Positions 1,286 to 57,577 of a DNA stretch of 64,000 nt are shown piece after piece. The position numbers were made by a program, and so were the translations under genes. The stretch lies in the IMG/VR virus record IMGVR_UViG_3300023174_000033, positions 124,001-188,000 of that record. One strand, written 5' to 3'. Positions within the stretch are counted from its first letter, which is position 1. The number at the start of each line of letters is the position of its first letter. The notes beneath the pieces are model-generated. The model was not told the DNA's origin and did no database searches. It saw only the letters and a program-made list of their open reading frames with translations.

Positions 1286-1293
1286 AATATATA
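1286..1293 (+). promoter_or_regulatory. Putative late promoter AATATATA (representative of about 16 copies)
   Basis: AATATATA 5 nt before ATG 1299; recurs in correct orientation before many genes (see findings). Confidence 0.6.
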
Positions 1294-1298
1294 AAAAT

Positions 1299-1676
1299 AT
1301 GAAGTATCTAAAAAAATTTGAAATGTTCCACTCCACTGGGTTAGATGATGGTAAAGATCACGTTGTTCCCAAGTATAATCCAAAAATAAGAAAGGAAGTG
1401 AGTGATTTTTTAGATGATTTGCCGGAGAGTAGTAAAATACAAGTTTTAAAATGTGTCGGAATTGAAGCGAACACTGAAGAAGATGGTGAGTTTGAGAAAC
1501 AATTTGAATTAGCAAAAAAGAAATTTATTGATTTCTTTGAAAACAACACAAATTTATCTATACAAACTATAGACTTGGAAAAATTCACAATTCCGGGGAA
1601 AGGCGGGGATGGAATACCTAGGGTAATGAATATTGGGGGAACAAGCCAAACTAACTCATTTAGGATAGGTCAGTAA
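1299..1676 (+). CDS. Hypothetical protein with capsid-targeting-like N-terminus (MKYLKKFE)
   Basis: 125-aa ORF directly after an AATATATA box. Confidence 0.65.
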   Translation: MKYLKKFEMFHSTGLDDGKDHVVPKYNPKIRKEVSDFLDDLPESSKIQVLKCVGIEANTEEDGEFEKQFELAKKKFIDFFENNTNLSIQTIDLEKFTIPGKGGDGIPRVMNIGGTSQTNSFRIGQ

Positions 1677-3378: not shown

Positions 3379-3645
3379 ATGAGGATTCTTGTGGTGTTTT
3401 TAATTTTTTTGACTATATTTTCCTGTAAGAAAGAGAAATGTTATGACTGTGTACAAGTAATAAAAATTACTTGCAATAAAGATATTAAGGGGTATCCAGT
3501 AAACACTAAAACTCCACTAGTATCATGTGGGGACAATATAGACATAGTAGATGATCCCAAACCAATAATTTTCATTGATACTCTCGGTGACACAATTTAC
3601 ACGTATTGGAAAGATACTGATTGTAAAGAACAGGGATTATTCTAA
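3379..3645 (+). CDS. Small Cys-rich lipoprotein
   Basis: Hydrophobic signal ending in lipobox IFS-C, followed by KKEK. Confidence 0.7.
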   Translation: MRILVVFLIFLTIFSCKKEKCYDCVQVIKITCNKDIKGYPVNTKTPLVSCGDNIDIVDDPKPIIFIDTLGDTIYTYWKDTDCKEQGLF

Positions 3646-19100: not shown

Positions 19101-20837
19101 AAGTTTTAATATTCCAACCATCTGTGAATTGTCAGCAAAATTACCCAATTGGGGATCCCAAGAATTTAATTCGGCCCCTAGTATTCTTATACCACTGTCT
19201 GAATTAAATTCACCACTGTCAAACACACTATTAAAAATTTGACTATTAACAGCTTTAGTTCTTTTCAAATTTGAATTTTCAACTATCGAATCAGCCAGTG
19301 TTGAACTTGATAAAATAACTGATTCCAAATCACAAAATTTGAATTTTGAAAAATTAGCCGTAATATCGTAATTTTGAGTTGTTTTAGAATAGTAATTCGG
19401 CACAGTCGGAATACTACTGCCTTTGATATTACAATTTTCAAAAGTTGACTGTATAAAAACACCCTTTATAATTTTAGAATCTATCACCAAATTATATCCG
19501 AGTCCAGAATTGTTTGTGGTGTCAATAACTTGTGAAACATATGGTATGGAGAATTGGTCATATAATAGACTAGCCCTCACAACCCCATCACCAACTTTTG
19601 TGTTTGTGTTCATGAGTCCATTATTCCAATCGGAGTTTATCATAACACCATAATTCCAGGTCGCATTCTGCCACTTATTAGATTTTAGATAAGTGCCAAA
19701 TAATCCACCATTATGTTCACCAACAAATTTACCATATTTGAAATATGTAGCAGTTATAATAGGAATTTTATACTGTCGGTCTATAACCCACTTTGAGGTA
19801 GTTTTGTCAAATTTATAAATTTGTCTTTCTTGAAAATTTGTTCCCTCCCAAGTAAAATCCTCACCCAGAATGAATAATCTTTTATTTCCTATTTCATTTG
19901 TGGGATTTGATAAAGTATCCATCAAACGAATTTGATTGGTCCTGATTTGAGTACTAACGTCAATCCAGTTACCAGTAACTGGTGATGATAAACTATCTCT
20001 AACAAAGAAAGCACCACCAGGTATGGATCCAGGTGGTGTAAAAGCACCAGTGTGGTTATCTAAAAAATCAACGTCCGTTGTATTTTTGGATTGTGCAAAT
20101 TTATTGAAAATTATGTTACCAGTCCAAGTTCTTAAAACATTACTAACAACCTTTCCTTGAAAAAGGGAAACTAAATCACCAGGAATTGTAGTGTCCGTAA
20201 CATATGTTTTGAATGTACTTATGTAATTAAATGGCTCCGAGTAGCTTGAAACGTAGTTAGTGGCGGTATAATCTATATTATGTACAAATATGAGATCGTT
20301 TATATCAAGTGGTGACTCATATGGATTCACTCCAGTATAGTCAACATCAAGAACAACTTTACAATCTTCAATAAGAAGAACTTTGTATCCATCACTACCC
20401 TTTGAATATTTATCATTTAATATTTTATCATGAGAATCATAATTGCCATTAATAATATATACCCTTTCACCTACTTTGAAATTTGTTGAAATTTCAGAAT
20501 AGAAAGCAGTTTTCCTAACACCACCGACTTCATATGGCTCAACATAGTTGAGTAACTTTGAGGTGAATTTATTTTTATTTGATGTGGGACTAGTATATTT
20601 TACCGATCCCTCGTTTTTTGAAATGTTCGGACGTAAAACATTTGGTCTAGAACCAATTGGTATAGTTGGAACAGCAATTGATACTGTTGCTATAATCTCT
20701 TGTTGTGGCTGATCAGCCTGAACAATTGGAATATTTACATTCTCTTCAACTGGTTTCGGCCCCTCAGGAGTTCCCTTTTTTAAAAAAGTATTATTGTTCT
20801 GTGAATTGTTATTAAAAATTACTTTATTTAACGGCAT
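10170..20837 (-). CDS. Giant (3555 aa) putative virion structural / tail-associated protein with (W/F)xxGx pentapeptide repeats
   Basis: Size, G/N/S/T/aromatic-rich composition, repeat blocks such as WNDGKFLSGEFYNSYWVDGTFSNGKF, AATATATA box upstream. Confidence 0.65.
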   Translation of the reverse strand: MPLNKVIFNNNSQNNNTFLKKGTPEGPKPVEENVNIPIVQADQPQQEIIATVSIAVPTIPIGSRPNVLRPNISKNEGSVKYTSPTSNKNKFTSKLLNYVEPYEVGGVRKTAFYSEISTNFKVGERVYIINGNYDSHDKILNDKYSKGSDGYKVLLIEDCKVVLDVDYTGVNPYESPLDINDLIFVHNIDYTATNYVSSYSEPFNYISTFKTYVTDTTIPGDLVSLFQGKVVSNVLRTWTGNIIFNKFAQSKNTTDVDFLDNHTGAFTPPGSIPGGAFFVRDSLSSPVTGNWIDVSTQIRTNQIRLMDTLSNPTNEIGNKRLFILGEDFTWEGTNFQERQIYKFDKTTSKWVIDRQYKIPIITATYFKYGKFVGEHNGGLFGTYLKSNKWQNATWNYGVMINSDWNNGLMNTNTKVGDGVVRASLLYDQFSIPYVSQVIDTTNNSGLGYNLVIDSKIIKGVFIQSTFENCNIKGSSIPTVPNYYSKTTQNYDITANFSKFKFCDLESVILSSSTLADSIVENSNLKRTKAVNSQIFNSVFDSGEFNSDSGIRILGAELNSWDPQLGNFADNSQMVGILKLFISDEDFFRMEKNDTFYIERVNKEFFLGTLDADNRIILPYETKYLLNLYWDAEFTSKVGSKQAVSVRDKRSNRNRFYISRSTSAQFQTKEVPNTTQINGITWWTDVTARFSSQANRLSPAYDSSWTPTPAEVAAGTWFYYLYEIPQQVAPPIRGGQGLIELPAFEEVIIAVPVDQIGGPVSIYGYGQTLHIFKYISVPTLQDPILATDGYTPLNAEAYERVFSNTTGPFDSLSRGQFRGEYSTDIQSFLINQTTPIYGANSYQINDVVRIYNPQTEKWEYYQCLVPHNPQLTPDSYVTRQYTIGGANQKVLASETSKYYNYCSIDIETRALGWYRDVQLNKDVYTFDRDQTTITMPLKPKMDNLLPTNIVDKIFKNVLLKNSNFHSGVFVNSNWVSGSLIEDFELVIYNRSTIASEVTGGVKFGAKLVMSRQQPGVSPLSSNFNIFTKFNQLRGNASWFNPAIKLPQLGEVIHINSITYQSPTQRVELEGQYVNGVQNLLGGLPYYNLGRPTWGTSPLVSISENVSSPNSPMSSFLTNVGTYSIIGSETVNYASMHRVVIENSTVYSGVFKRVYFKNTKLTNRVPYVKPSTFDIDPTSLPKVVNVVFARNNSLVENGFIYQSHITNITNTGGYFHSCYWNGATFSNGEFQSGYWLNGTFLNGKFSDSNSLTWYYITPIFGTEQVYQTNDETNEGSVNPYISAINYFDIAKKPIRRIWNDGKFLSGEFYNSYWVDGTFSNGKFWRSKWFAGDFESGIFGDQSIKYEETTFGYGWYSPFPVGGINWLPTIYAVNGFGFIPEFLGRTQSKFFGGVVQNGLVGGNGVVFWYNGQMSAGEFTSASASSNMQSIWYNGTFYGSVFGNYAQWKNGIFNSGKFISIYGSEEQTFVTRPQNTTVFSWESGVFNGGEFGTGELINNSIWGSGEFNDGIFRGRLWRNGVFSGGNFMGSVPNYPSGIPSNEDNTIEKDIYLSFAPFRDPNSFNLANGDDIRGLFYGLWVDGVVTEKKSLYVTNEKVVSKIKRAIKTTDRKSRVNFQNVVWIDGLYDYENSTFKNSLFCKGTFSNGTFDGGVFNPYVDRDYLYSTASSAFYFEPNLIKWERGVFVTGSFYAAEWQNGLFKNGYMSGAYWKNGIWEYGNADNIFWDGGTWRNGNWNGSPFNHLVVATGPANPGEVGYSHSVARGREFDIILRTDRFMRESYPQTFKTAESNDTSYIFVSNVFSASPYSFNFGVESPNALRLRDSEYHEIYFPYAVKTNASPAVLAFTDVRTALTTNPLTFWLSGQSFNFFTMSGQSGANDSTWEFTRSQKFGWLGGSDFTYNPSVGTPIATIPAGSVTSTTTPTQFCTIVEGLTFGGLFYVTGLPYNFKGKAGVKLRFYNYRNNPTWPIYNPSTTIQAYLTISSVENSLGYILDLNKSAEFIRGWATGSHFTEGNAIVEHNVPGDPAKPLTETYEALDYVPVVQYGNSAIVKNFETSIKACSDWDQSLNIPFYWNGTYDASTGLPNLITFDTTTQNRNPVNLYTKFSDYGNLPIPEPSDSRTINSSPRGYNTYPKRYLGESQINIPEDNVQSGAPVSGGASGLIPNSSPSHKIYARWLSYASINAAKGYSMAQFDTLISQINAAIATTSQKPFNGVTGSRIGIYFYNMDIAGFPREFSREVGLPTTAIAGTDDEKRDQAIELIREIGISGFPWYSPTENRYVVINVGSQYYGQGVSVTAGWDFGSSASVTPNLSGFLSVNFGISPNGTDIASFPTGVQRQFDVRRAYYFALGGVDIYQGYGYQYYTEMEVSVELTDTVSFEVWMAGASYSTYDLKSKKANYSAEGVPRESFFPAFYRLKFNYITTPEVLNNPDPDRNRFWVRKTSFGILRIYSWRVTRRKIEYNFDFNNALYSGVDQTKKFIGIPATPSVVLSLPTGFDRQNSIVFGNGVFRQGVWENGVWNGGYRFNSSSFGFFEVDDLLKANDILFAIRKTSRDTLWSIKIQLVDSLSAYQLKLDVGQKISVSNLAAYDNNDRRIYISGVLDVESYSLEENTLTVTYKSLTPISYIKKDSSNHLIYITTNVWTNGAFLNGVFRGVWNNGLFKGTPVLTEMIDSHFIDGAFEGGHFKSVEKKANSTIYQRHNTGLIQNFRFKDLNNPAPNRKWESTVAEDITNRYLSWIDVVYSTQSKVNLKLDTTQLRVSDFIPMMIGSEKADAAYFQEYEDKPLVDLVTGATSVNPNVGGWKPRTTSTVFNAPNLQGYPTLDVLSSVSEFRDFLTTTKRTYNLGTKRKVFSNLLANDGNFIKPISSNATFSRQLGSVATTLTSIGFTFSTLWQRVGSEYVPPGYAGSAPKTWYINQVGHGDKDKPLTYEPREIVVTSGDIIEFRMNDLRKPALKWSGTPGVANGTYPTWLKARGRNGGSGVQEFQVNQPMGYYKNACYPFNDYSNNGAYYNPGVTTPFGYFGGTPYPYPLASFIYAVANQINGLGGGWNNNGHEYFGWNAFNNNQGARFGGPARWIPRGFSAVGYGGTSAPLGNRIQLTTGWQSITPYGDIKFDTDVLGWAFTDAGYDYPQSRSINTATGERSSFTGLPPIQTNQTTGRTGPGPYSAPKTPGLTHGVHFYQNLMRLAPTNLIYGDWSEFNASGLYDAGGSVQQWVSYFKDQLNRAGLNGERRYNPTEFNPYNAYGKITVLPIPEPVWTKNLPANYSYDSNTDSANDNILKLTISDYVETFAPTFSPLNWIQILQNKNIKPVPNRYYELSVDITYNLKVNYAPTPPQLDGFYQGLFLDDIFGYLDQQSDNLGLPQKNLHQYMNHFYNGEIVAQTNLPGQPLPNPKVRVRSTEYFMNKTNLDITFFNSFPVRGGPLSIDISNISLNEVNMLPFFSYFSASVFDTNSFLAAGENPDPSKILGRAPYIPTQIDFSPRIPQEGRAPFVELSNNNFSFTDNFEISISSKFISKSSEAVFDLTTTSQLSDSDFLKASGQVATEDPGGGGPGPGG

Positions 20838-20892
20838 TTAACTCCTATAAATTTATTTATATATTAAATGGAGTTTATTTTCTTGAATGATT

Positions 20893-24215: not shown

Positions 24216-24938
24216 ATGAACGTAATTTGTATAAAATCAACAAAGAAACTTGTTAAGAATGCAACATATAGAGTTGCTTCTTTCTCAAACGACAACAATA
24301 AAAAATCCCCATATTTCAGACCAATGATAAGAATCTATCTTACTGATAATATGGTATCGGCCTTTCCTTTAGAATCTTTTAAACCAACAGACTCTCCCGA
24401 CTTCCAACAAATAAATTGGATTTGTCCAGAATATTCTCAAATATTGGAGGAAAAACAACAAATGAGAATTGATGCAACTTTGAAAGCTGGTGACTACATA
24501 ATTCCTTTATATGATAGCTTAAAGACACTCATAAAAGGTCGTAAATATAAAGTGAAGGAGGTTATGGTAGATAAAAGTCAATGGGGTGGTATTAAGATAA
24601 AATTAATGGGATCTGAAAGGTGGTATACAAGTTGGCATTTCAGAAGATGTACAAATCAAGAATCAAGGGAAATAAGTTTGAAAAACCTTTTTGATGAATC
24701 AACAGACACCGAGGTCGTAAATAGATTCAAAAGAAAATTTGATTACCTATCAGAAGAAGAGAAAAAGGACATCCTAATAAAGATATTTTTCCAATCATAC
24801 CTTGATAGAAACAGAAATAATTCCGATGTGGTTGATTGGGCAATTACAAAAATCGGATGTACTTATAATCTGAAAAATGAGGATTTAGAAATGATACTTG
24901 ATACATCAATACGAGATATTATAAAATCTTTAAAATAA
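24216..24938 (+). CDS. Hypothetical protein (possible tandem SH3-like domains)
   Basis: 240-aa ORF; VICIKS and LKAGDYII...GRKYKV segments. Confidence 0.6.
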   Translation: MNVICIKSTKKLVKNATYRVASFSNDNNKKSPYFRPMIRIYLTDNMVSAFPLESFKPTDSPDFQQINWICPEYSQILEEKQQMRIDATLKAGDYIIPLYDSLKTLIKGRKYKVKEVMVDKSQWGGIKIKLMGSERWYTSWHFRRCTNQESREISLKNLFDESTDTEVVNRFKRKFDYLSEEEKKDILIKIFFQSYLDRNRNNSDVVDWAITKIGCTYNLKNEDLEMILDTSIRDIIKSLK

Positions 24939-48563: not shown

Positions 48564-48624
48564 AGGTTTGGTTTTACTTTTTATATTATTTTTAATTTTT
48601 AAGTTTTTGTGTTATATTTGTCAT

Positions 48625-49263
48625 GTGAAATTTGATAACTATAGATACATCTATCCACCAAGACCGAAGAATGCTATATCCCCAAGTGAATTAAATTTTT
48701 GGGATAATAAGTCTCTCATTGTGCAACCAAAGTTTAATGGATCAAATACTACGATTTATACTGATGGTAGGAAAATAATCACCATGAATAGACATGGGCA
48801 AAAACTTACAAATTTTAAGATCAAGGATAATGAAATTTTAAATCTGCACAAATCTGGTTTGGGTAAGTGGACCGTTATAAACGGTGAATATATGAATAAG
48901 GGAAAAGTTGATGAAAAAAAAATAAACTTTAATGATAAATTTATAATTTTTGATATTTTAGTTTTTAATTCAGAATATTTAGTTGGTGAAACTTTTGCTA
49001 ATAGGATTGAACTTTTAAACAATACTTTTCCAATATACAATATTGGTTCCTCAACTTACAGTTTGTTTTCTGAAAATATAGGAATTGTTAAAAGTTATGA
49101 AAGTGGATTTTCAAATCTCTTTGAAAATCTATCAAAAATTGATATGATTGAGGGGTTAGTTATGAAAAGAAAAACCGCAAAGTTGGAAATTGGAAATACT
49201 GAAACTAATAACACCAAGAGTCAATTGAAATGTCGGAAACCAACCAAGAATTATAAATATTGA
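48625..49263 (+). CDS. Minimal ATP-dependent polynucleotide ligase-like nucleotidyltransferase
   Basis: Motif I QPKFNG, motif III INGE, IIIa IFDI, IV EGLVMK, V KCR; GTG start 4 nt after TATATTTG (48613-48620). Confidence 0.75.
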   Translation: MKFDNYRYIYPPRPKNAISPSELNFWDNKSLIVQPKFNGSNTTIYTDGRKIITMNRHGQKLTNFKIKDNEILNLHKSGLGKWTVINGEYMNKGKVDEKKINFNDKFIIFDILVFNSEYLVGETFANRIELLNNTFPIYNIGSSTYSLFSENIGIVKSYESGFSNLFENLSKIDMIEGLVMKRKTAKLEIGNTETNNTKSQLKCRKPTKNYKY

Positions 49264-49283
49264 AATTGAATATATAATTATGT

Positions 49284-50891
49284 ATGTTCAAATATTTACA
49301 CAAATTTCAATCTTTCTTTGAAGCAACTCTTAATATTCAAGAACTAGAAAAACCAGAGAAATCTTCTTCAAAGAAGAGAGGTCAAGTTCTTGTTAATAAG
49401 TTAAAATCAAAAGATCCAATTAAGAAAAAGGATGGTAAATTAGTTACTGTTGACAAGATGTATGTGGATGGTGATTGGGAAGAACCATTGGATGCTGTAG
49501 ACCAAATAACGACAGATGGTGAATATGACCAGGAAAAGGGTAAAGAATATTTTATAAAGAACTTCACACCTGATATGGATCCCAAAAAGTACAAGTATAG
49601 GGGAGTTTTCAAAGATGATGATGGTGACGAGTTTGGATTAACTCAAATTTTCAAATCTGTTGATTTTGGTTCAAAAGGAGCTGGAGTTGATACTGGAACT
49701 AATGAAGTTTTGCAAGCAATATTTATAGGAATCAGATTGGAAAGTAATGAGGACTTGAGTGCGGAAACTATAAGAAAGAGTTACCAAAGATATCTTATTG
49801 AAAGTGAAAAATCACCAACAGTAATGGTTGATGATAAATATGAAAATATTGATGATGAAAAATTGGAAAAGTTTTTATCAAGTCCAAATTGGGTAGAAAC
49901 ATTTATCAACATACCAAACCTTTTATTTTCATATGAAAAGGTTGTGGATAAACAATTCTCTCCTCTAATAGACCCCCAAAAATCATATCTGGTCTATCAC
50001 ACAAGTTTTAAATCCGATAAATCTCCATATTTAATTCTAAAAAAGAAATTCTTACAACTTTCTAAACTATCTAGATCCACAAAAAAAGACTTTAGTAAGG
50101 TAAATTTCAATAAGTTTTGTCCTGGTGATGTTTATCTGTTTGAGCCAAACTCAATCGGTGAATTCAAAAATGATATTGATAATTGTTCAGATATTGATCA
50201 GTTGATCAAAATTTGTGAACGTTATTATAATGAGAGTAGACTCATTCCAATATCACTGAAAATGGTAAAAGTTGGTGGTAGTTACAGTATAATTACCAAT
50301 AACGAGATTGGTTCAAATTCACCTCTATTCCTAATTGATAAGTTTATAATAAATGATGATCCATATAGGGGTATCAATTCAAAGATCAAAACTTCTTCTA
50401 TTTGGTTCTACAGGAAAGAAAATGTACATAGAGACAGGACTATAAATTTTGATTCGTCTGATACATCAAAATATACAGAGATTGATGGTGAAGTTGATGG
50501 ATCAACTTCTAGACATGGTAAAATTTCTCTTGAGCAAATAATTAGAATTATAAGAAAGAATAAACAATTAAATAAGATTGAATCAGTGAATGATTTGAAA
50601 AAATTAACTATTGGAGAGCTGGATGAGAAATTAATGAAATTGTTTGAAGAGTTAGACTCAAAGAGTGGAAATAAGATTCAATACAATTTATCTGATAGAG
50701 GATCAAAGATAGAAGGTAGTGAGAAGAAAATAATTTCAAAAATTCAATCTTTACAAGTTTTAAAAACTTTTTTTGATATTTATTCCAAAGACGAGAAAAT
50801 AGCGAACATTATAATGACAGATATTATGAAATTTGCTTTATCAATTCAAGTTGACTACTTCCTAACTCCTTACTATCTAAGGGTAATCTAA
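49284..50891 (+). CDS. Hypothetical protein, possible PD-(D/E)xK-type nuclease, with capsid-targeting-like N-terminus
   Basis: NE...PGDVYL...IPISLK pattern; begins MFKYLHKFQSFFEA. Confidence 0.5.
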   Translation: MFKYLHKFQSFFEATLNIQELEKPEKSSSKKRGQVLVNKLKSKDPIKKKDGKLVTVDKMYVDGDWEEPLDAVDQITTDGEYDQEKGKEYFIKNFTPDMDPKKYKYRGVFKDDDGDEFGLTQIFKSVDFGSKGAGVDTGTNEVLQAIFIGIRLESNEDLSAETIRKSYQRYLIESEKSPTVMVDDKYENIDDEKLEKFLSSPNWVETFINIPNLLFSYEKVVDKQFSPLIDPQKSYLVYHTSFKSDKSPYLILKKKFLQLSKLSRSTKKDFSKVNFNKFCPGDVYLFEPNSIGEFKNDIDNCSDIDQLIKICERYYNESRLIPISLKMVKVGGSYSIITNNEIGSNSPLFLIDKFIINDDPYRGINSKIKTSSIWFYRKENVHRDRTINFDSSDTSKYTEIDGEVDGSTSRHGKISLEQIIRIIRKNKQLNKIESVNDLKKLTIGELDEKLMKLFEELDSKSGNKIQYNLSDRGSKIEGSEKKIISKIQSLQVLKTFFDIYSKDEKIANIIMTDIMKFALSIQVDYFLTPYYLRVI

Positions 50892-51307
50892 TTTACCTTT
50901 GACTTGACTTCCCAGAAATCGTGTGGAATCATATCTCTGTAGATATCTTCAAACATATCCATAAAGTATTCAAATTCTGGCCTCAAAGCTTTTTCAAAAC
51001 TATCAATGTAATTTTTCCCCTTACTTGATCCAAAATGTACGTTATTATTAAAGTCTGTAATTATATAAATATCAAAACTTGATTTATTTATGGTAATTTT
51101 AGTTCTGAAAATTAATTCATCACCCTCACACCTTAAATCATAAACTTGAACTTTGATCACATCCTCATCATAAATCCGATTGATTGTTTTGGAATTGAAA
51201 AAATAATCTTCATCGTCTTCATTTTTAAGAAAAGGATAAAGACCCAAATTAAATGTTTCCTCGGGTGTCATTAGTTCATTAAATTTCTTTATCCCTTTGT
51301 TTTTCAT
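50888..51307 (-). CDS. Hypothetical protein (begins MKNKGIKKFNE)
   Basis: 139-aa ORF with TATATATA 4 nt upstream. Confidence 0.6.
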   Translation of the reverse strand: MKNKGIKKFNELMTPEETFNLGLYPFLKNEDDEDYFFNSKTINRIYDEDVIKVQVYDLRCEGDELIFRTKITINKSSFDIYIITDFNNNVHFGSSKGKNYIDSFEKALRPEFEYFMDMFEDIYRDMIPHDFWEVKSKVN

Positions 51308-51349
51308 AATCTATATATAATTTTGAATATATAAGTAAATATATTAGGT

Positions 51350-51916
51350 ATGCAAAAATTCTCAAATTTAAGACCCGAAGAGGAATCAAAGTTTAAAAAA
51401 GATGATGTACTTTTTAAAAATGGATCTATGAAAGTAGTAAAGTACGAAGAGTGGCCAGTTATCACAGACAAAGACGCAGTTATCTGCATTCCGTACCTCA
51501 CCGAATTGAATAAGTTTATTATCAGACAAGAATACATACCTTCTTACAAGTATAAAGAAGGTCAACAAAATCACTTGTCTTGCGTCGGTGGCTCAATTGA
51601 AATGGGTGAAACACCGGAAGAAGCTTTATTTAGAGAATTACAAGAAGAAGCTGGAATTGTTTTAAGGGATGGTTATACAATTGAATTTGACAAACCTTTA
51701 TTTTTTATGAAGGGTTCGGCTAACAAATTTTATTCCGCTATAATACCTTTGACTGAAAATGATTATCATGAGGTTGTTATACAAGGTGATGGTAGTTTAT
51801 TAGAGAAAATGAGCCAAACTGCAAAAGTTGATATTAAATACTTAAACTCTATGTTCCCGTCGGATGTGGTTACGGAATATATGTTTATGAAATTAAGACA
51901 GTTTGCTAATCTGTAA
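51350..51916 (+). CDS. Nudix hydrolase
   Basis: Nudix box GGSIEMGETPEEALFRELQEEAG. Confidence 0.9.
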   Translation: MQKFSNLRPEEESKFKKDDVLFKNGSMKVVKYEEWPVITDKDAVICIPYLTELNKFIIRQEYIPSYKYKEGQQNHLSCVGGSIEMGETPEEALFRELQEEAGIVLRDGYTIEFDKPLFFMKGSANKFYSAIIPLTENDYHEVVIQGDGSLLEKMSQTAKVDIKYLNSMFPSDVVTEYMFMKLRQFANL

Positions 51917-53249
51917 TCTCAACAGTTGAGGTTCTACCCTCTCTTTTCATTATTCCTAATATCATTGATTGGACTTGCTTATTAAAGTCTTTTGAATCTG
52001 GTGTTACATATTCATCTATTCTAACTCTAAGTCTATTATCATCTCTATATGTTTTAGATAACCATTCACCCCAAACAGATCTTAACCATTCATCACCCCC
52101 TTCAAAGTACTCTAGCCAATCTAAATTGAATTTCATCGTTAAGAATGGGTGTCCATCTTTCCAATAGTTTTTTACTACCTTGGTTTCTAGGTTGTCCTCT
52201 ATAACTTCTTCCAAAGCTCTGACTATTTTGTTTTGGAATTCATCTACATAAGCATCTACTTGCATATTACTATATAAATCCCTAATTTCATCAATAGTAT
52301 CTTCATCTATTTCATATAGTAATTTACCAATATTCTTTATTCCAACCTTTTGAATCCTTGAAATCAATTCTTCTTTGGAATTTATACCAACACCAACAAG
52401 AGTTTCATACTCATCTTCATCAACTTCTTTGATTTTTTCGAAGTCTGTCACTAGATAATCTACTAATAATTGAATAGTTTTTATGTTTAAATAATAATCA
52501 AACAGTGACTCAACATCTGGTCTATCTGCATAGTCCCAATATCTATCCCATAGTGATTCAAAACCATTATCATCAACTAATATATTGTAGTAATCATCTC
52601 TTGAGGAAACCAAATATCCAGCATATGTATCAGCTGGATATGTTACATAAGCCTGTTCCTTATCATCATAATAAACTTCCAATTTATCATCAAAATCGTG
52701 ATATTCAAATATCATCTTATCGGTTAGATAAAGTGACTTATACCAAATAAGATTTATATTAATAGTTGAAACACCAACTATATCATCTGGTTCTACTTCA
52801 TATTCAATACCACCCTTTATTGTTAATTTGTCCAACTGAAGCATACCATCATCATCAAATAGTTCTATTTTACCAAACTTTGGTTTTATTCTTTTTATGA
52901 ATGATGTTAAAACATATGTTAGGTTTTCATCTGATAGTTCATTTTTTCTTGTCCCACTCATTATCTTAGGACTTACTTCAACTCTAACACAAGGAGTTAA
53001 TTCCCTTTTATTCAAAACTTTTACTAAATTATAAGGTGTGTCTTCTGTTTGATCTATAAATGAAAATGTATAGTTTATTATATAACCACCTTCTTCTAAT
53101 TCAAAAAGTAAATCTTCTATTTCTTCAGGTGTGATTGGCCAGTAATTTTTATATTTCAATTCTGGCCGTTCATACATAGTTCCTTGGAAAAGGTCTAATT
53201 GTTTCTCTTTTAACAAAAAAGTTTTCCAATCAATTAGGTGTTTTGACAT
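51906..53249 (-). CDS. Acidic hypothetical protein (begins MSKHLIDWKTFLLKE)
   Basis: Long ORF; start revised to ATG 53249. Confidence 0.65.
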   Translation of the reverse strand: MSKHLIDWKTFLLKEKQLDLFQGTMYERPELKYKNYWPITPEEIEDLLFELEEGGYIINYTFSFIDQTEDTPYNLVKVLNKRELTPCVRVEVSPKIMSGTRKNELSDENLTYVLTSFIKRIKPKFGKIELFDDDGMLQLDKLTIKGGIEYEVEPDDIVGVSTININLIWYKSLYLTDKMIFEYHDFDDKLEVYYDDKEQAYVTYPADTYAGYLVSSRDDYYNILVDDNGFESLWDRYWDYADRPDVESLFDYYLNIKTIQLLVDYLVTDFEKIKEVDEDEYETLVGVGINSKEELISRIQKVGIKNIGKLLYEIDEDTIDEIRDLYSNMQVDAYVDEFQNKIVRALEEVIEDNLETKVVKNYWKDGHPFLTMKFNLDWLEYFEGGDEWLRSVWGEWLSKTYRDDNRLRVRIDEYVTPDSKDFNKQVQSMILGIMKREGRTSTVEITD

Positions 53250-53262
53250 AGAACATTTTTTT

Positions 53263-53895
53263 TTATTCGGAACTCCAAGAACCATCGCGACCAGATTTTT
53301 TCCAACCGGTTCTTCTTATTACCACTTGAAATTCATTCACTTCATATCTGTCTTTCCCTGATTCTAATTGATTGTAGAATCCATTTAGTCTTTCTGCCTT
53401 GGATAGTGTGGATTTTAGTGGGTTAACATTTAATCTTTTTACTCTTTCACCCAGTGATTTTGTGTATTTCACAAAACTATCAAGGGTATCATTGTCTTTA
53501 TACATTTTTATTTTATACTCATACTGACTACTGTAAACTATAAACGAATATCCATCATCAATGATATCTAAAAAAATATCTTCTATTTCAGCAATTTCGG
53601 GGAAAACACTCCTTTCTTCCCTTATCATTTTATAAACTTGAAATATTTTTTCTTTAAGTTCGGGACTTCCAGAATTTACAACACCATAGAGTTTTTGAGT
53701 GGCTGCTTTATACTCATCATATCCACTTTCATAAAAGTTAAATAAATTCTCAGTTTCTGAATTATTAAAAAAAAGGTCCGATATTGAGTTTGTTGGTTTT
53801 GAATCTTCTGAAAAATAATAAACAATTTCCATTGCCATTTCTTCCGTGAACCTACCATCCACTGATTCATTAAATGTATTCCACCCCTTTATCAT
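53263..53895 (-). CDS. Hypothetical protein (begins MIKGWNTFNES)
   Basis: 210 aa; AATATATA 5 nt upstream. Confidence 0.65.
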   Translation of the reverse strand: MIKGWNTFNESVDGRFTEEMAMEIVYYFSEDSKPTNSISDLFFNNSETENLFNFYESGYDEYKAATQKLYGVVNSGSPELKEKIFQVYKMIREERSVFPEIAEIEDIFLDIIDDGYSFIVYSSQYEYKIKMYKDNDTLDSFVKYTKSLGERVKRLNVNPLKSTLSKAERLNGFYNQLESGKDRYEVNEFQVVIRRTGWKKSGRDGSWSSE

Positions 53896-53946
53896 AAGGG
53901 TATATATTAAAGTTACAGATTTTTATTTTTAGAAAAAACGATACTA

Positions 53947-54393
53947 TCAAACATATGTTTCAAGAGAATCCCTCCCATCGAAAATAACCACCATAGAATC
54001 GTGCATACCAGCTTTGTCACTCACAGACTCCCCCTTAGTGTTTATTCCACTAAATTTCAATCTACCTCTGATGAATCTAATCTCGGTTTTGTTTGGGACT
54101 ATATGGTCATGAAATAATCTTGTAGATGTAGAGACCGGTAGGAGCATAACACAGAGTTTACCCTTTTTTGATTCCTCTATAGCTTTTATTACAAAAGACT
54201 CTTTTAATTTTTGTGAGTATGGTGGATTGATAAAGTTTCTTTCCTTCCATTCAACTTTCAAACCATCCCATTTTTCAATGTCATGATTTAGTGGACAAGG
54301 ATCAAAATTGAAATCAAATTCTTTATTCAAATCATTGTAGAATGATGAGGGAGTTCCCCAATCATCTTTATGATTAAGATTTCTATTCTTCAT
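53947..54393 (-). CDS. Phage DNA N6-adenine methyltransferase (small Dam-type)
   Basis: DDWGTP, FDPCP, FINPPY, LLPVSTST, GRLKF. Confidence 0.85.
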   Translation of the reverse strand: MKNRNLNHKDDWGTPSSFYNDLNKEFDFNFDPCPLNHDIEKWDGLKVEWKERNFINPPYSQKLKESFVIKAIEESKKGKLCVMLLPVSTSTRLFHDHIVPNKTEIRFIRGRLKFSGINTKGESVSDKAGMHDSMVVIFDGRDSLETYV

Positions 54394-54398
54394 AAAAA

Positions 54399-54812
54399 TT
54401 ATATGTAAGAATCATCAAAAGTTAACTCGGTCGGAACTCTTGGAAAATTTTTTCCTCTTTGAATTAGATTTTTCTCAACTCTTTCAGGTTTGAATAATTC
54501 CAGGATATATTTCTCTGCTTTTTCCACATCAAATGGTTTACAAGAAAACATATCTATGAATGTATATCCCTTGTCTTCAAATGAATGAATTGATAGATGA
54601 CTTTCAGCAATTATAACGATTCCTGTGATTCCTCTGTCCTCAGGCACAAGACCTGAATATGGAAAAACATAAGGTTGAGTTATAGGTGTCATACCAATCA
54701 TTTCTGGTAATTCTTTCAATAGTTCAAAATGTAAATTATAATTACTGAGGATTTCTTTTGGACAACCAATTAAATCTAGGGTTAGATGTGGACCGAAAGC
54801 GTCATTATTCAT
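54399..54812 (-). CDS. speD: S-adenosylmethionine decarboxylase (SpeD, pyruvoyl-dependent) family
   Basis: GPHLTLDL, GITGIVIIAE-SHLSIH autocleavage site, IDMFSC. Confidence 0.88.
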   Translation of the reverse strand: MNNDAFGPHLTLDLIGCPKEILSNYNLHFELLKELPEMIGMTPITQPYVFPYSGLVPEDRGITGIVIIAESHLSIHSFEDKGYTFIDMFSCKPFDVEKAEKYILELFKPERVEKNLIQRGKNFPRVPTELTFDDSYI

Positions 54813-54888
54813 TTTTTAATACTTTATTTTTTTTTTTAAAAAAGTATATATTCATTATTAAGTTTCTATTTGAAATATATAAATGGTA

Positions 54889-55440
54889 ATGAAAAGAATT
54901 TTTACCACCCTCAATGAATATGCCTCCTCACAAGAGTATGATAGGTTATTGCAAGTCCGTATGGATAAGATTTTTGATACTATCGAGGAATATAAGACAA
55001 AACATAAGATGAAAATTGAAGTTAGTGATGTAAACTTTGATGCCTATACAGATTTTTCAAAAAAACATTTATTAGAGATAAATGATTTTATTTCTAGTAT
55101 TAATAAAGAGGGTAAGATTTGGCACTGTGATTTCCCCACTTTTTGGGTAAGTAAAATGGATGATTTGGGAGAGGGTCCACAGATCGATGAATTAGAAATA
55201 GAACAGATTCCAATTAGTATTGAGTATAAATATACTCACGTATATTATCCATTTGATCATAAGAAACGTGGATTTGACTATGAGTTAGAGGATAGGTACA
55301 AAGTAACATATAAGGGGTCTACAGATGAATGGTCAAGTGAAGAGTTACTAGAATTGATGAGGGATGGGGCATTTCATTCTGAGTATGGCATTATGGGATT
55401 AACACCGGAAGATGTTAAGAGATGCATTGATAGGATATAA
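54889..55440 (+). CDS. Hypothetical protein (begins MKRIFTTLNE)
   Basis: AATATATA at 54874-54881; start at 54883 or 54889. Confidence 0.6.
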   Translation: MKRIFTTLNEYASSQEYDRLLQVRMDKIFDTIEEYKTKHKMKIEVSDVNFDAYTDFSKKHLLEINDFISSINKEGKIWHCDFPTFWVSKMDDLGEGPQIDELEIEQIPISIEYKYTHVYYPFDHKKRGFDYELEDRYKVTYKGSTDEWSSEELLELMRDGAFHSEYGIMGLTPEDVKRCIDRI

Positions 55441-55452
55441 TTTTTTAATAAA

Positions 55453-56049
55453 TTAGTGCCAATCTTTGAATTCTATACCTAATTCCTCAATTTTAGAAAC
55501 CAATTCTGCTTTCAAATTACCATAATGTGGTGGGAAGTAATGTGGATGAAACTCAACAAATAATTTTTTTATTTTCCTAATCTGGTTAGTTTCAATTAAA
55601 TGTTCCAGTACTGCGAATTCACTACCCTCAATATCCATTTTGCAAATTATATTTGAATCGTCTGGTAAATTTTTCAAAAATTCTGAAAAATTTAAACTTT
55701 CTATCTTTATTGGTTCAACGATACCACATCTTTCCAAATATTGATTTTTCATATCATCAATAACAATTGATGAAGCGTGACCATCAACATTTGATACTCC
55801 ATCTGTGGGTGAATTTGACATACTCTTCACATGATTTTCTTGTTTGAAAAAAACATAACCGTCTTCAATCCAAACAGCTTTCTCAATTGGTGTTATGTTT
55901 GGATGATTTTTAGTACGTTCTACAATCATACATGCCGGATTCGCTTCAAATGAGTAAATATGATAGGTATCGTCAATAATCCCCATACTCAAAAATTGAT
56001 TAATTCCCTCTCCTAGATGAAATCCACAGTCTAGAAATATATTTTGCAT
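55453..56049 (-). CDS. FkbM-family methyltransferase
   Basis: FLDCGFHLGEG, FEANP, KMDIEGSE, VEFH. Confidence 0.85.
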   Translation of the reverse strand: MQNIFLDCGFHLGEGINQFLSMGIIDDTYHIYSFEANPACMIVERTKNHPNITPIEKAVWIEDGYVFFKQENHVKSMSNSPTDGVSNVDGHASSIVIDDMKNQYLERCGIVEPIKIESLNFSEFLKNLPDDSNIICKMDIEGSEFAVLEHLIETNQIRKIKKLFVEFHPHYFPPHYGNLKAELVSKIEELGIEFKDWH

Positions 56050-56114
56050 TTAATTTATATTAATTTTGATATTTATAATTCGGAAAAACATTAAAGTTTT
56101 TTTTTGTAAATTAT

Positions 56115-56145
56115 TTTGAATTCTAAAAACATTCCATTATCTTTG
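56115..56145 (+). promoter_or_regulatory. Bacteroidota-type primary-sigma promoter
   Basis: TTTG(56115)-N19-TATCTTTG(56138-56145). Confidence 0.7.
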
Positions 56146-56184
56146 TATTAAGAATTATAACGCACTTTTTAAAAAAACTATTTA

Positions 56185-57360
56185 ATGGATATAAGAAAAA
56201 AATTCCTAAAATTAACAAAACGTACTTACCCTTATGGAACAGAAACTCAACTGGTTTCTTTTTTGCCACAAGGATATTTCATGGACAAACATGGTAATTA
56301 CTATTATAAAATTGGTGAATCCAAGACAGCTTTCACTTGTCACCTAGATACCGCATGTAAAACACAAGTCACTGTAAATCATAAGATTGACAAGAATATA
56401 ATTTCTACTGATGGGAAATCAATCCTTGGAGCTGATGATAAAGCTGGTATGACAGTACTACTTTACATGATAGAGAAAAACATTCCTGGTCTTTACTGTT
56501 TCTTTATCGGAGAAGAAGTTGGGTGTATTGGATCTGGTAAAGCTTGTTATGACTACGAATTCACCAATTATGACCGTATGGTTTCTTTTGACCGAAGGGG
56601 TACAGAGTCAATAATCACCTTCCAATCATCAAAAAGATGTTGCTCTGATGAATTCGCTAACGAATTGGCAAATAGATTGAATAAGCATGGACTAACTATG
56701 AGGTCGGATAACACAGGTGTCTACACTGATTCTGCTGAATTCATTGATGCTATACCAGAGTGTACAAATATTTCAGTTGGTTATTACCGAGAACACACAA
56801 ACTTTGAGCATCAAGATATTGACCACTTGATTAAACTTTGTATAGCTGTTGCCAAAATTGATTGGGAAACACTTCCAGTTCAGAGAGATAAGACAAAGGT
56901 TGAATATAAGTCCTATTCATATAGTTCTTATAGTAACAAAGGATTTTCGTCTTACGATTATGATTCAAAAAAATACGGAAATGAAGCTGGATTTAGCACT
57001 TATGACTCTTGGTCAGGTTGGGACAAGTCTCCATCAAGGAGGAAAAAATATAAGAAAGAGTATGGTTACTATGACGATTTCTACTTTGAAGATGAAGAGA
57101 AGTATGACAAATATAGTTATGACCTAGATACTGGAGAAGAAAAAGTCGGAAGGTCTTACTATAACAGTATTGATAACGATATAACAGATTCTCGTAGCAA
57201 TCCTTATGTCAATAAATATTCCTCTTTAAGAGAAATGGTTTATGATGATAGACTGACCGATGCTGAAGTTCTTACTCTAAAAGATCAATACTTTGATTTG
57301 ACCGATAGAGAACAATTGGAAACTTATATTGATTTGAGAAATCAAGCGGCTTCCCTATAA
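56185..57360 (+). CDS. M28/M20-type metallopeptidase-like protein with Tyr/Ser/Asp-rich tail
   Basis: CHLDT, LGADDKAG, EEVGCIGS, SFDRRG, TNISVGYYREH. Confidence 0.82.
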   Translation: MDIRKKFLKLTKRTYPYGTETQLVSFLPQGYFMDKHGNYYYKIGESKTAFTCHLDTACKTQVTVNHKIDKNIISTDGKSILGADDKAGMTVLLYMIEKNIPGLYCFFIGEEVGCIGSGKACYDYEFTNYDRMVSFDRRGTESIITFQSSKRCCSDEFANELANRLNKHGLTMRSDNTGVYTDSAEFIDAIPECTNISVGYYREHTNFEHQDIDHLIKLCIAVAKIDWETLPVQRDKTKVEYKSYSYSSYSNKGFSSYDYDSKKYGNEAGFSTYDSWSGWDKSPSRRKKYKKEYGYYDDFYFEDEEKYDKYSYDLDTGEEKVGRSYYNSIDNDITDSRSNPYVNKYSSLREMVYDDRLTDAEVLTLKDQYFDLTDREQLETYIDLRNQAASL

Positions 57361-57560
57361 GGACAAATAATTTCTGAAGATTTTATTTTTTCATCAGGAG
57401 CATTTTGTATCTTTGACTCTGGTATGTTGTGGCTAATTAATAATTTGCTACCCTTTTTTTCAACAATTTGTACTGGTGTGACCATGTTGTTATACCAGTA
57501 TTCTATTAAAACCTTATCACCGATATTAAAATAATTTTTGTACTCTAAAATAAATTTCAT
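57342..57560 (-). CDS. Small SH3/KOW-like protein (begins MKFILEYKNY)
   Basis: FNIGDKVLI; AATATATA 5 nt upstream. Confidence 0.55.
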   Translation of the reverse strand: MKFILEYKNYFNIGDKVLIEYWYNNMVTPVQIVEKKGSKLLISHNIPESKIQNAPDEKIKSSEIICPYREAA

Positions 57561-57577
57561 ACTTTTATATATTAATT

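What the first reader, a model, noticed from the sequence alone, without database searches (positions are those of the whole stretch)
49284..57560. Unrelated late proteins share a capsid-targeting-like N-terminal peptide
Seen: MFKYLHKFQSFFEA (49284), MKNKGIKKFNEL (51307-), MSKHLIDWKTFLLKE (53249-), MIKGWNTFNES (53895-), MKRIFTTLNEY (54889), MKFILEYKNYF (57560-), more weakly MQKFSNL (Nudix, 51350), and outside this span MKYLKKFEMF (1299). Nearly all follow an AATATATA box, and the protein bodies are unrelated. Established: T4 internal proteins carry a roughly 10-aa capsid-targeting sequence (MKTYQEFIAE-like) cleaved after Glu by the prohead protease. Inference: this is a modular address tag for packaging cargo into the head for ejection, making these proteins candidate injected anti-defence or takeover effectors.
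Basis: inference. Interest (0 to 1): 0.62.

Follow-up and report, generated by a model that had tools for sequence, protein, structure and literature searches.

The report
Shared N-terminal tag on huge-phage proteins

Summary
The window lies in a 464,605-bp, about 98% complete phage genome with a T4-type capsid protein. It is related to the uncultivated 'huge phages' LR745206 and LR756502.

Only two of eight (window 49284 and 1299) belong to a statistically real family. The consensus is M-K-[YH]-[LI]-K-x-[FY]-E-x-F. It starts 58 of 516 ORFs, against 0 of 2,134 internal-Met controls and about 1 expected from shuffles. The 58 bodies (59 scored, one a signal-peptide false hit) fall into 46 BLAST-unrelated families.

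Thirteen N-termini also fit the core of the T4 capsid-targeting sequence, [FYW]xxF[ILV]xE (0.6 expected).

- The tag is selected at peptide level.
- It is strictly N-terminal.
- AlphaFold models of two different folds leave it disordered.
- Orthologues swap it as a module.
- It is tied to an ATATATA promoter box shared with head and tail genes.
- It is common in viral contigs and nearly absent from 596 Gb of prokaryote genomes.

The head protease-scaffold fusion carries nine to ten 14-residue repeats with the same T4-like core.

Best reading: a capsid-loading tag (about 0.5). Packaging, cleavage and any effector role are untested.

The parts
49284..49325 (+). Tag of the 535-aa ORF 49284-50891 (MFKYLHKFQSFFEA): a clear member, canonical motif offset by one residue
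   Evidence: Matrix score 20.8, HMM 18.6 bits. In 52 aligned homologues (30-85% identity to the query) E13 is invariant and F11 is kept in over 90%. AlphaFold pLDDT is below 50 for residues 1-12, while the body scores 88.6.
49270..49276 (+). ATATATA promoter-like box 8 nt before the ATG at 49284
   Evidence: Genome-wide position peak at -11/-12.
1299..1328 (+). Tag of the 125-aa ORF 1299-1676 (MKYLKKFEMF): a clear canonical member
   Evidence: Matrix score 23.7, HMM 19.9 bits.
1287..1293 (+). ATATATA box before the ATG at 1299
57525..57560 (-). N-terminus of the 72-aa ORF 57342-57560 (MKFILEYKNYF): a borderline tag. Box at 57566-57572.
   Evidence: HMM 5.7 bits, in the zone where decoys become common. 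The N-terminus is conserved in orthologues of LR745206 and LR756502, but so is the whole small protein.
51272..51307 (-). N-terminus of the 139-aa ORF 50888-51307 (MKNKGIKKFNEL): a possible variant tag, not significant alone. Box at 51312-51318.
   Evidence: Matrix score 4.8, HMM 2.3 bits. It falls in the loose class with a mild excess. It is identical in the 96%-identical orthologue L143_09.
53863..53895 (-). N-terminus of the 210-aa ORF 53263-53895 (MIKGWNTFNES): a possible variant tag, not significant alone. Box at 53901-53907.
53205..53249 (-). N-terminus of the 447-aa ORF read from the ATG at 53249 (MSKHLIDWKTFLLKE): not significant, no box, follows the upstream gene closely
   Evidence: A 23%-identical homologue in LR745206 starts with a clearer tag-like peptide scoring 13.2.
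54889..54921 (+). N-terminus of the 183-aa ORF 54889-55440 (MKRIFTTLNEY): not above background. Box at 54875-54881.
   Evidence: HMM 2.6 bits.
51350..51916 (+). NUDIX hydrolase gene. Its N-terminus (MQKFSNL) is not a tag. Two boxes at 51313-51319 and 51327-51333 share the 42-nt divergent spacer with the gene at 51307.
   Evidence: Pfam NUDIX E 1.8e-8. Matrix score -11.4.

Best explanation
The N-terminal peptide is a capsid (prohead-core) loading tag of the T4 capsid-targeting-sequence kind, used here on about 64 proteins.

It comes in two forms. The canonical form is M-K-[YH]-[LI]-K-x-[FY]-E-x-F. The rarer form is T4-like, [FYW]xxF[ILV]xE.

Proposed mechanism, all inferred:
- Tagged genes are transcribed from the same ATATATA-box promoters as the head and tail genes.
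- The free, unstructured tag is recognised in trans by the prohead core. The core is built from the 690-aa protease-scaffold fusion (genome 247865-249937), whose scaffold part is a run of 14-residue units with a T4-tag-like core (YSEYIAE).
- The cargo is enclosed when the capsid shell assembles.
- Where the tag ends in a hydrophobic-x-Glu site, the T4-type prohead protease removes it.
- The cargo then travels in the virion and enters the next host with the DNA.

Shown: the motif, its statistics, its modularity, its disorder in models, its restriction to viruses, its link to the promoter box, and the T4-type head genes. Inferred: binding to the core, packaging, cleavage and ejection.
For: 1. 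The motif is real and strictly N-terminal. It starts 59/516 ORFs against 0/2,134 internal Met and 1.2 shuffled. The HMM gives 67 against 1.8 decoys. Only 4 internal matches occur in 134,142 positions, with 2 expected.

2. The bodies are unrelated: 46 BLASTP families, and different Pfam folds or none.

3. Selection acts on the peptide. Synonymous codons vary at the conserved residues. GC3 of codons 2-10 equals that of untagged genes, 0.236 against 0.232.

4. It behaves as a linear motif, not part of a fold. In AlphaFold models of the HAD-like enzyme and of the 535-aa window protein, residues 1-12 have pLDDT below 50, yet they are among the best conserved columns.

5. It is modular. Orthologues of the HAD-like enzyme that are about 80% identical carry either MKYLKLFENF or MIYKYSEFLD on the same body. 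Homologues of the window protein carry either form.

6. It links to T4.
- The T4 tag is MKTYQEFIAE and is cleaved off (PMC8442874).
- Its core pattern [FYW]xxF[ILV]xE occurs in residues 2-18 of 13/516 proteins here, against 0.63 expected (p 2e-13).
- The same pattern ends exactly at residue 65 of T4 gp23, the length of its removed propeptide (PMC5694885).

7. The head machinery is T4-type. The capsid protein matches Pfam Gp23 at 86.7 bits. The protease matches phrog_207 at 1e-29 and weakly matches Peptidase_S77. The protease is fused to nine to ten YSEYIAENLDKNIA units, and these are conserved in six relatives. The capsid protein's N-terminal region has a clade-conserved hydrophobic-x-E-N site.

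8. Expression context fits. 38/58 tagged genes have the box, against 132/458 untagged (p 8e-8). Most box-less tagged genes are overlap-coupled behind a boxed gene. The box also precedes the capsid, portal, protease, sheath and terminase genes.

9. It is virus-specific. More than 116 stretches match in IMG/VR, against 3 in 596 Gb of prokaryote genomes. Relatives carry 16-24 strict copies each, with 0 in reversed-pattern controls. In the loci fetched around those hits, 302 of 1,373 ORFs are tagged.

10. There is precedent for scale: about 50 different head proteins in the giant phage SPN3US (PMC7411985 abstract).
Against: - There is no virion proteome, no cultured relative carrying the tag, and no expression timing.
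- Only 21/58 canonical tags have [LIVM]-x-E at positions 6-8, and 34/58 have E at position 8. Cleavage there is doubtful for most.
- A profile of the scaffold repeat does not score N-termini above decoys. The canonical tag is therefore not a copy of the scaffold unit.
- LR756501 has the scaffold repeats but no strict canonical tag, only variants.
- Tagged bodies are mildly acidic, unlike the basic T4 internal proteins.
- Twelve percent of all genes is a very large cargo list. It includes a well conserved HAD-like enzyme lying among replication genes.
- The box also precedes a topoisomerase II gene, so 'late' is not established.
Confidence: 0.5

Rival explanations
1. The tag is a trans-recognised sorting or control signal for a destination other than the capsid. 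Candidates are a phage-built intracellular compartment or assembly site, a phage chaperone, or timed degradation.
For: - A conserved but disordered N-terminal linear motif needs a partner, but nothing identifies that partner.
- Twelve percent of the proteome is tagged, including enzyme-like proteins that could act in the cytoplasm.
- The canonical form differs from the T4 tag and mostly lacks a T4-type cleavage site.
- The bodies are acidic and hydrophilic.
Against: - No such N-terminal sorting signal is known for phage compartments (own knowledge).
- The a-priori T4 tag pattern is enriched at N-termini here.
- Both forms are exchangeable on the same orthologous body.
- The tag shares its promoter box with the head genes.
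Confidence: 0.2
2. The conserved start is a nucleic-acid or translation-initiation feature of near-leaderless transcripts. The box ends 4-5 nt before the ATG in 22 tagged genes. On this reading it is not a protein signal.
For: - There is no room for a leader or Shine-Dalgarno sequence behind many boxes.
- The tag's codons are A/T-rich.
Against: - Synonymous codons vary at conserved residues, and F/Y and L/I exchanges keep residue type.
- GC3 of codons 2-10 equals that of untagged genes.
- About 17 tagged genes have no box and start by overlap coupling inside operons, yet keep the tag.
- Host-type genomes do not use it: 3 matches in 596 Gb.
Confidence: 0.05
3. The peptide is a passenger with no function of its own. 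The promoter plus first codons would be a recombination cassette or a remnant of gene duplication that has spread to new bodies.
For: - Tagged genes cluster: 19 adjacent pairs against 6.5 expected. They are concentrated near the genome ends.
- One family has 11 tandem members.
- Some gene pairs share 22-32 identical bases across the promoter and tag.
Against: - The median shared word between tagged starts is only 8 nt.
- The tag is kept in orthologues down to about 30% identity, where E13 is invariant and F11 is kept in over 90%.
- It is kept across relatives whose capsid proteins are only 34-50% identical.
- This indicates purifying selection on the peptide.
Confidence: 0.07
4. For the five weak peptides in the reader's span (51307, 53249, 53895, 54889, 51350), the resemblance is only the usual Lys/Asn/Phe-rich make-up of N-termini in a 32% GC genome.
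For: - Their scores lie where shuffled N-termini are as common as real ones. Scores of 4-8 give 12 observed against about 9 expected. HMM scores of 4-6 bits give 18 against 17.
- The tripeptide NES is not significant after correction for multiple testing.
Against: - A loose pattern class has a mild excess, 13 against about 5. It contains 51307 and 53895, both with a box at -11/-12.
- A distant homologue of the 53249 protein starts with a clearer tag-like peptide.
- The homologue family of the 49284 protein shows that such looser forms replace the canonical one.
Confidence: 0.5

Closest known systems
Capsid targeting sequence (CTS) of phage T4 internal proteins IPI, IPII, IPIII and Alt
   Same: - A roughly 10-residue peptide at the extreme N-terminus, shared by otherwise unrelated proteins.
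- An amphipathic, aromatic-plus-Glu make-up.
- The phage has a T4-type capsid protein and prohead protease.
- The T4 core pattern [FYW]xxF[ILV]xE is enriched at N-termini here. One protein just outside the window starts MRFQKFYEFIAEK.
- Tagged genes sit behind a promoter class shared with head genes.
   Different: - About 64 tagged genes (12% of ORFs), against a handful in T4.
- The main consensus MKYLKLFExF is not the T4 sequence.
- Only about a third of tags have a hydrophobic-x-Glu site at the expected place.
- The bodies are acidic rather than basic.
- The scaffold is fused to the protease and is built of 14-residue repeats.
- Packaging and cleavage are not demonstrated.
Polymorphic internal-protein loci of T-even phages: diverse proteins with only the CTS conserved (PMC3012670)
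   Same: - Unrelated bodies sit behind a conserved promoter-plus-tag start.
- Tags are exchanged between orthologues.
- Tagged genes are clustered.
   Different: Here the tagged genes are spread over the whole genome as well as in arrays. At least one (the HAD-like enzyme) is a well conserved gene rather than a fast-changing one.
N-terminal propeptides of head and ejection proteins of giant phages phiKZ, 201phi2-1 and SPN3US (PMC5694885)
   Same: - Giant phages with about 50 head proteins.
- Proteases related to T4 gp21 that cut after Glu.
- Propeptides proposed to target proteins into the prohead.
   Different: Those propeptides are mostly 100 residues or longer, are not a common short consensus, and were found by mass spectrometry. 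Here the tag is a 10-residue shared consensus found by sequence alone.
Cargo-loading peptides of encapsulins (own knowledge, not tested here)
   Same: A short, disordered terminal peptide that addresses unrelated enzymes to the inside of an HK97-fold shell.
   Different: - They are usually C-terminal and have a different consensus.
- They bind the shell protein itself.
- There is no protease step, no DNA and no ejection.

Membership tests
T4-type capsid targeting sequence | A short peptide at the extreme N-terminus, shared by proteins with unrelated bodies | tested here: met
   59/516 against 0/2,134 internal Met. 46 BLASTP families. Strictly N-terminal.
T4-type capsid targeting sequence | The peptide ends in a prohead-protease site (hydrophobic-x-Glu, cut after Glu) | tested here: inconclusive
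   - 21/58 canonical tags have [LIVM]-x-E at positions 6-8, and 34/58 have E8.
- 13 N-termini fit the extended T4 pattern, which also ends at residue 65 of T4 gp23, the length of its removed propeptide.
- No cleavage data exist.
T4-type capsid targeting sequence | The phage builds a T4-type prohead: gp23-like shell, gp21-like protease, scaffolding core | tested here: met
   Pfam Gp23 at 86.7 bits. phrog_207 head maturation protease at 1e-29, and Peptidase_S77 at 19 bits, below its cut-off. Portal phrog_213. Repeat scaffold fused to the protease.
T4-type capsid targeting sequence | Tagged proteins are present in proheads and virions | not testable with these tools
   All carriers of the tag are metagenomic. 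The cultured relative PTm1 has no tag.
T4-type capsid targeting sequence | The tag is sufficient to load a foreign protein into the capsid | not testable with these tools
   This needs an experiment. The only indirect support is tag exchange on orthologous bodies.
T4-type capsid targeting sequence | Sequence similarity to the T4 tag MKTYQEFIAE | tested here: inconclusive
   The core pattern is enriched about 20-fold, but it fits only 13 proteins. The main consensus differs.
Sec or lipoprotein signal peptide | A hydrophobic core of 7 or more residues followed by a cleavage site or lipobox | tested here: not met
   The tag has alternating charged and aromatic residues. The bodies are hydrophilic, GRAVY -0.63. 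True lipobox N-termini in this genome look different. One signal peptide (g390) was a false hit and was removed.
Huge-phage clade with LR745206, LR756502, LR756501 and, more distantly, Lak | Capsid protein similarity and a genome over 400 kb | tested here: met
   Capsid protein identity is 68%, 66%, 50%, 47% and 34% to the LR records, and 29% to Lak. The genome is 464,605 bp and 98% complete.

The most novel reading that the evidence does not exclude
The tag is not a capsid label. It is the address code of a so far unknown phage-specific protein-sorting system in huge phages of freshwater Bacteroidota-like hosts. One shared N-terminal peptide would route about an eighth of the phage proteome to a dedicated site in the infected cell, such as a compartment, an assembly factory or an export route. 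The T4 tag would then be a distant, specialised relative of that code.
Probability: 0.15. Interest if true: 0.85.

Novelty: new variant of a known kind. Interest (0 to 1): 0.7.

Why it matters
If the tag loads cargo into the head, a ten-residue motif would let the packaged, and probably ejected, proteome of uncultivated huge phages be read straight from sequence. That is about 60 proteins per genome and hundreds of families across the clade.

This would show how a 0.46-Mb phage prepares its next infection. It would give a ranked list of proteins to test for early host takeover. It would extend the T4 tag, used as a tool for loading foreign proteins into capsids, to a second and much more widely used consensus.

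The scaffold built of tandem units with the same core as the T4 tag also suggests how such tags are recognised. That is still unclear for T4 itself.

Even if the destination turns out to be different, a virus-only N-terminal code on 12% of a proteome is a concrete and testable feature.

Tried and rejected
- **Complex prediction.** Protease-scaffold residues 1-470 with the tagged HAD-like enzyme gave no answer (score 0.00, controls not run). It counts neither way.
- **Tag as a copy of the scaffold unit.** A profile of 52 repeat units does not score N-termini above decoys. I dropped this as a general claim. Only the 7-residue core is shared, and only g215 and g025 carry it near the N-terminus.
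- **Giant eukaryotic virus.** I considered this at first because of the mixed strands, AT-richness and a promoter abutting the ATG. I rejected it on the T4-type capsid, portal, sheath and terminase genes and the lipobox N-termini.
- **Cultured relatives with proteomes.** Tenacibaculum phage PTm1 has no tag and a different scaffold repeat. tblastn of two tagged proteins finds only uncultured huge phages or nothing.
- **Function of the 535-aa window protein.** No Pfam hit. One PHROG of unknown function. No Foldseek match (best E 0.046). Best VIA Z is 4.5 on a C-terminal subdomain. The Atlas gave only viral hypotheticals.
- **Protease or scaffold in other tag-rich IMG/VR fragments.** Nothing was found, and the records are incomplete, so there is no conclusion.
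- **Transcription evidence.** One metatranscriptome holds short contigs of a 95-99% similar relative over parts of two genes. Contigs cannot show transcript starts or prove transcription.
- **Literature search for the peptide strings.** No paper contains them.
- **Second-motif search.** Residual pair and tripeptide statistics are dominated by general N-terminal composition.

Full report
**What the window is.** The window is bases 124001-188000 of a single 464,605-bp contig with 32% GC. IMG/VR holds it as a virus record estimated 98% complete. My own simple ORF caller gives 516 ORFs covering 94% of the genome under the standard code.

The genome encodes:
- a T4-type major capsid protein (Pfam Gp23, 86.7 bits);
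- a portal, and a head maturation protease (phrog_207 at 1e-29, with a weak Peptidase_S77 match);
- tail sheaths and a large terminase.

Capsid protein identity to other phages is as follows.

| Phage | Identity |
|---|---|
| LR745206, LR756502 (uncultured huge phages) | 68%, 66% |
| LR756504, LR756501 | 47-50% |
| LR756500 | 34% |
| Lak phages | 29% |
| Tenacibaculum phage PTm1 | 28% |

Runs that hold the DNA are freshwater and lake metagenomes. Lipobox N-termini point to a bacterial host. This is a huge tailed phage, not a eukaryotic giant virus.

**The observation.** All eight peptides are at the stated places. Six of them sit 4-8 nt behind an ATATATA box.

Over all 516 N-termini, the following residues are 2 to 3.4 times enriched: K2, Y3, L4, K5, F7, E8 and F10. 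Internal Met positions show nothing.

- An iterated position matrix finds 59 N-termini at score 10 or more. This compares with 0 of 2,134 internal-Met controls and 1.2 per 516 shuffled N-termini. One of the 59 is a signal peptide.
- An HMM that allows offsets finds 67 at 8 bits or more, against 1.8 decoys.
- The consensus is M-K-[YH]-[LI]-K-x-[FY]-E-x-F.
- The whole motif occurs internally 4 times in 134,142 positions, with 2 expected.

The other five cannot be told from background. A looser class shows a mild excess, 13 against about 5, and includes 51307 and 53895.

**Not paralogy, not nucleotides.** The 59 bodies fall into 46 BLASTP families. One family of small proteins in tandem arrays has 11 members.

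Pfam finds nothing for most bodies. The exceptions are a poly(A) polymerase/CCA head domain, and weak HAD, nucleotidyltransferase and OmpA-like matches.

- Synonymous codons vary freely at the conserved residues.
- GC3 of codons 2-10 is the same in tagged and untagged genes.
- About 17 tagged genes that start by overlap coupling inside operons, without a box, still keep the tag.

The selection therefore acts on the peptide.

**A free linear motif, exchanged as a module.** The HAD-like enzyme (genome 232325-232984) has 548 metagenomic homologues. The listed orthologues, at 65-97% identity, nearly all start with the canonical tag. Nine of them, about 80% identical in the body, start instead with MIYKYSEF[LV]D.

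Its AlphaFold model has mean pLDDT 77.7. Residues 1-12 are left without structure at pLDDT below 50, and the fold begins with the strand at residues 15-19.

The 535-aa window protein (49284) has 73 homologues at 29-85% identity. Nearly all full-length ones start with either the canonical tag or a [FY]xxF[LF]E form. In the alignment E13 is invariant and F11 is kept in over 90% of sequences, while mean column identity is 34%. Its model is confident (pLDDT 88.6), except again for residues 1-12.

A peptide that is highly conserved, unstructured and interchangeable must be read by a partner in trans.

**Virus-specific and clade-wide.**
It matches only 3 stretches in 596 Gb of prokaryote genomes.
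- A degenerate 24-nt pattern occurs 21 times in this genome. It occurs 24, 22, 19 and 5 times in four other IMG/VR records, 16 times each in LR745206 and LR756504, and 8 times in LR756500. It never occurs in reversed-pattern controls. It is absent from LR756501, Lak-B5 and PTm1.
- LR756501 has variant forms instead.
- In the loci fetched around the IMG/VR hits, 302 of 1,373 ORFs are tagged, and 136 of these have the ATATATA box.

**Link to the promoter box.** 38 of 58 tagged genes have the box within 45 nt, against 132 of 458 untagged genes (p 8e-8). In 22 tagged genes it ends 4-5 nt before the ATG. Most of the box-less tagged genes are overlap-coupled behind a boxed gene.

The same box precedes the capsid, protease, portal, sheath and terminase genes. 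It also precedes a topoisomerase II gene, and some tail-fibre genes lack it. 'Late' is therefore a reasonable inference, not a finding.

**Link to T4.** The T4 tag is MKTYQEFIAE. It is cut off by the prohead protease and is enough to load foreign proteins (PMC8442874; PMC5694885; PMC3012670).

- Its core, written [FYW]xxF[ILV]xE, occurs in residues 2-18 of 13 of 516 proteins here. That compares with 0.63 expected from internal windows and 0.86 from shuffles (p 2e-13).
- Seven of those 13 are also canonical-tag members, so the union is 64 proteins.
- In T4 itself the same pattern ends at residue 65 of gp23. That equals the 65-residue propeptide reported for gp23. So the pattern looks like an extended protease recognition site.

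**The scaffold.** The 690-aa protease gene of this phage continues into nine to ten tandem 14-residue units, YSEYIAENLDKNIA (42-nt period). An acidic stretch and a C-terminal domain follow.

- The same architecture is present in six relatives. PTm1, which lacks the tag, has a different repeat.
- The unit core YSEYIAE is close to the T4 tag core and contains the T4-type I/L-x-E site.
- The capsid protein's N-terminal region has a clade-conserved hydrophobic-x-E-N site.

These observations suggest a conserved T4-like protease specificity and a scaffold made of tag-like units.

**Limits.**
- A profile of the whole scaffold unit does not pick out N-termini.
- Only 21 of 58 canonical tags have [LIVM]-x-E at positions 6-8.
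- Tagged bodies are hydrophilic and mildly acidic, unlike T4 internal proteins.
- The complex prediction gave no answer.
- No cultured phage carries the tag.
- The function of the window's main tagged protein remains unknown.
- Nothing supports or excludes an anti-defence role.

**Verdict.** I put about 0.5 on a T4-like prohead-loading tag and about 0.2 on another trans-recognised destination. Small weights go to translation-level or passenger explanations.

It is a new variant of a known kind. It has the same logic as the T4 capsid-targeting sequence, with a different main consensus, a roughly tenfold larger set of tagged proteins, and a repeat scaffold fused to the protease.

Noticed in passing
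outside the window: genome 247865-249937 (-), L003:2865-4937: The head maturation protease is fused to a scaffold-like region of nine to ten tandem 14-residue units (YSEYIAENLDKNIA, 42-nt period), followed by an acidic stretch. The unit core resembles the T4 capsid-targeting sequence. The architecture is conserved in six related huge phages.
   Followed up: yes
L159 (T4, NC_000866): gp23 residues 59-65: The T4 tag core pattern [FYW]xxF[ILV]xE also ends at residue 65 of T4 gp23 (FGSFLTE), which matches the reported 65-residue propeptide. T4 gp22 starts MLKEQLIAE.
   Followed up: partly
outside the window: genome about 430460-436973 (L021:5460-11973), plus scattered copies; window 24216-24938: A second recurrent N-terminus, MK-x-[IV]-C-I-[KDN], occurs on about 15 small proteins (66-118 aa), mostly in one tandem array. 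The tripeptide ICI is seen 8 times against 0.19 expected among untagged N-termini. It is probably a paralogous small-domain family.
   Followed up: no
window 51308-51349: A 42-nt divergent spacer between the genes starting at 51307 (-) and 51350 (+) holds three ATATATA boxes, at 51312-51318, 51313-51319 and 51327-51333. It looks like a compact bidirectional promoter.
   Followed up: partly
outside the window: genome 269815-278325 (L013:4815-13322): Two adjacent tail-sheath paralogues of about 1,400 aa (1,404 and 1,380 aa) have identical first 20 residues, and each follows a box at -33.
   Followed up: no
window 6230-7960 (+): A 576-aa ORF starts MIIQEIGIKGFKSF and scores 8.7 bits with the tag HMM. 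From my own knowledge this looks like the usual start of SMC/RecF-type ATPases, so it is probably a false hit. It has no box.
   Followed up: no
window 3379-3645 (+); also genome 48368, 61030, 315196, 438534: Five small ORFs have lipoprotein-type signal peptides (lipobox with Cys). This is evidence for a bacterial host.
   Followed up: no
window 54399-54812 (-): A 137-aa ORF contains FGPHLTLDLIGC and HLSIHSFE. It is conserved in L143 and in LR756501 (L158, 2336-). From memory it resembles a pyruvoyl-dependent decarboxylase proenzyme. I did not test this.
   Followed up: no
window 10170-20837 (-): A 3,555-aa ORF follows an ATATATA box (20858-20864). It lies in the higher-GC, negative GC-skew block at 10-36 kb, which also holds ORFs of 1,526 and 1,063 aa. 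These are probably structural genes.
   Followed up: no
window 48568-49263 (+): The ORF just upstream of the first tagged gene contains YRYIYPPRPKNAI. Homologues of 212-213 aa in LR745206 and LR756502 start further upstream. My ATG-only caller truncated it to 159 aa. From memory it resembles a ligase or capping-type nucleotidyltransferase. I did not test this.
   Followed up: no
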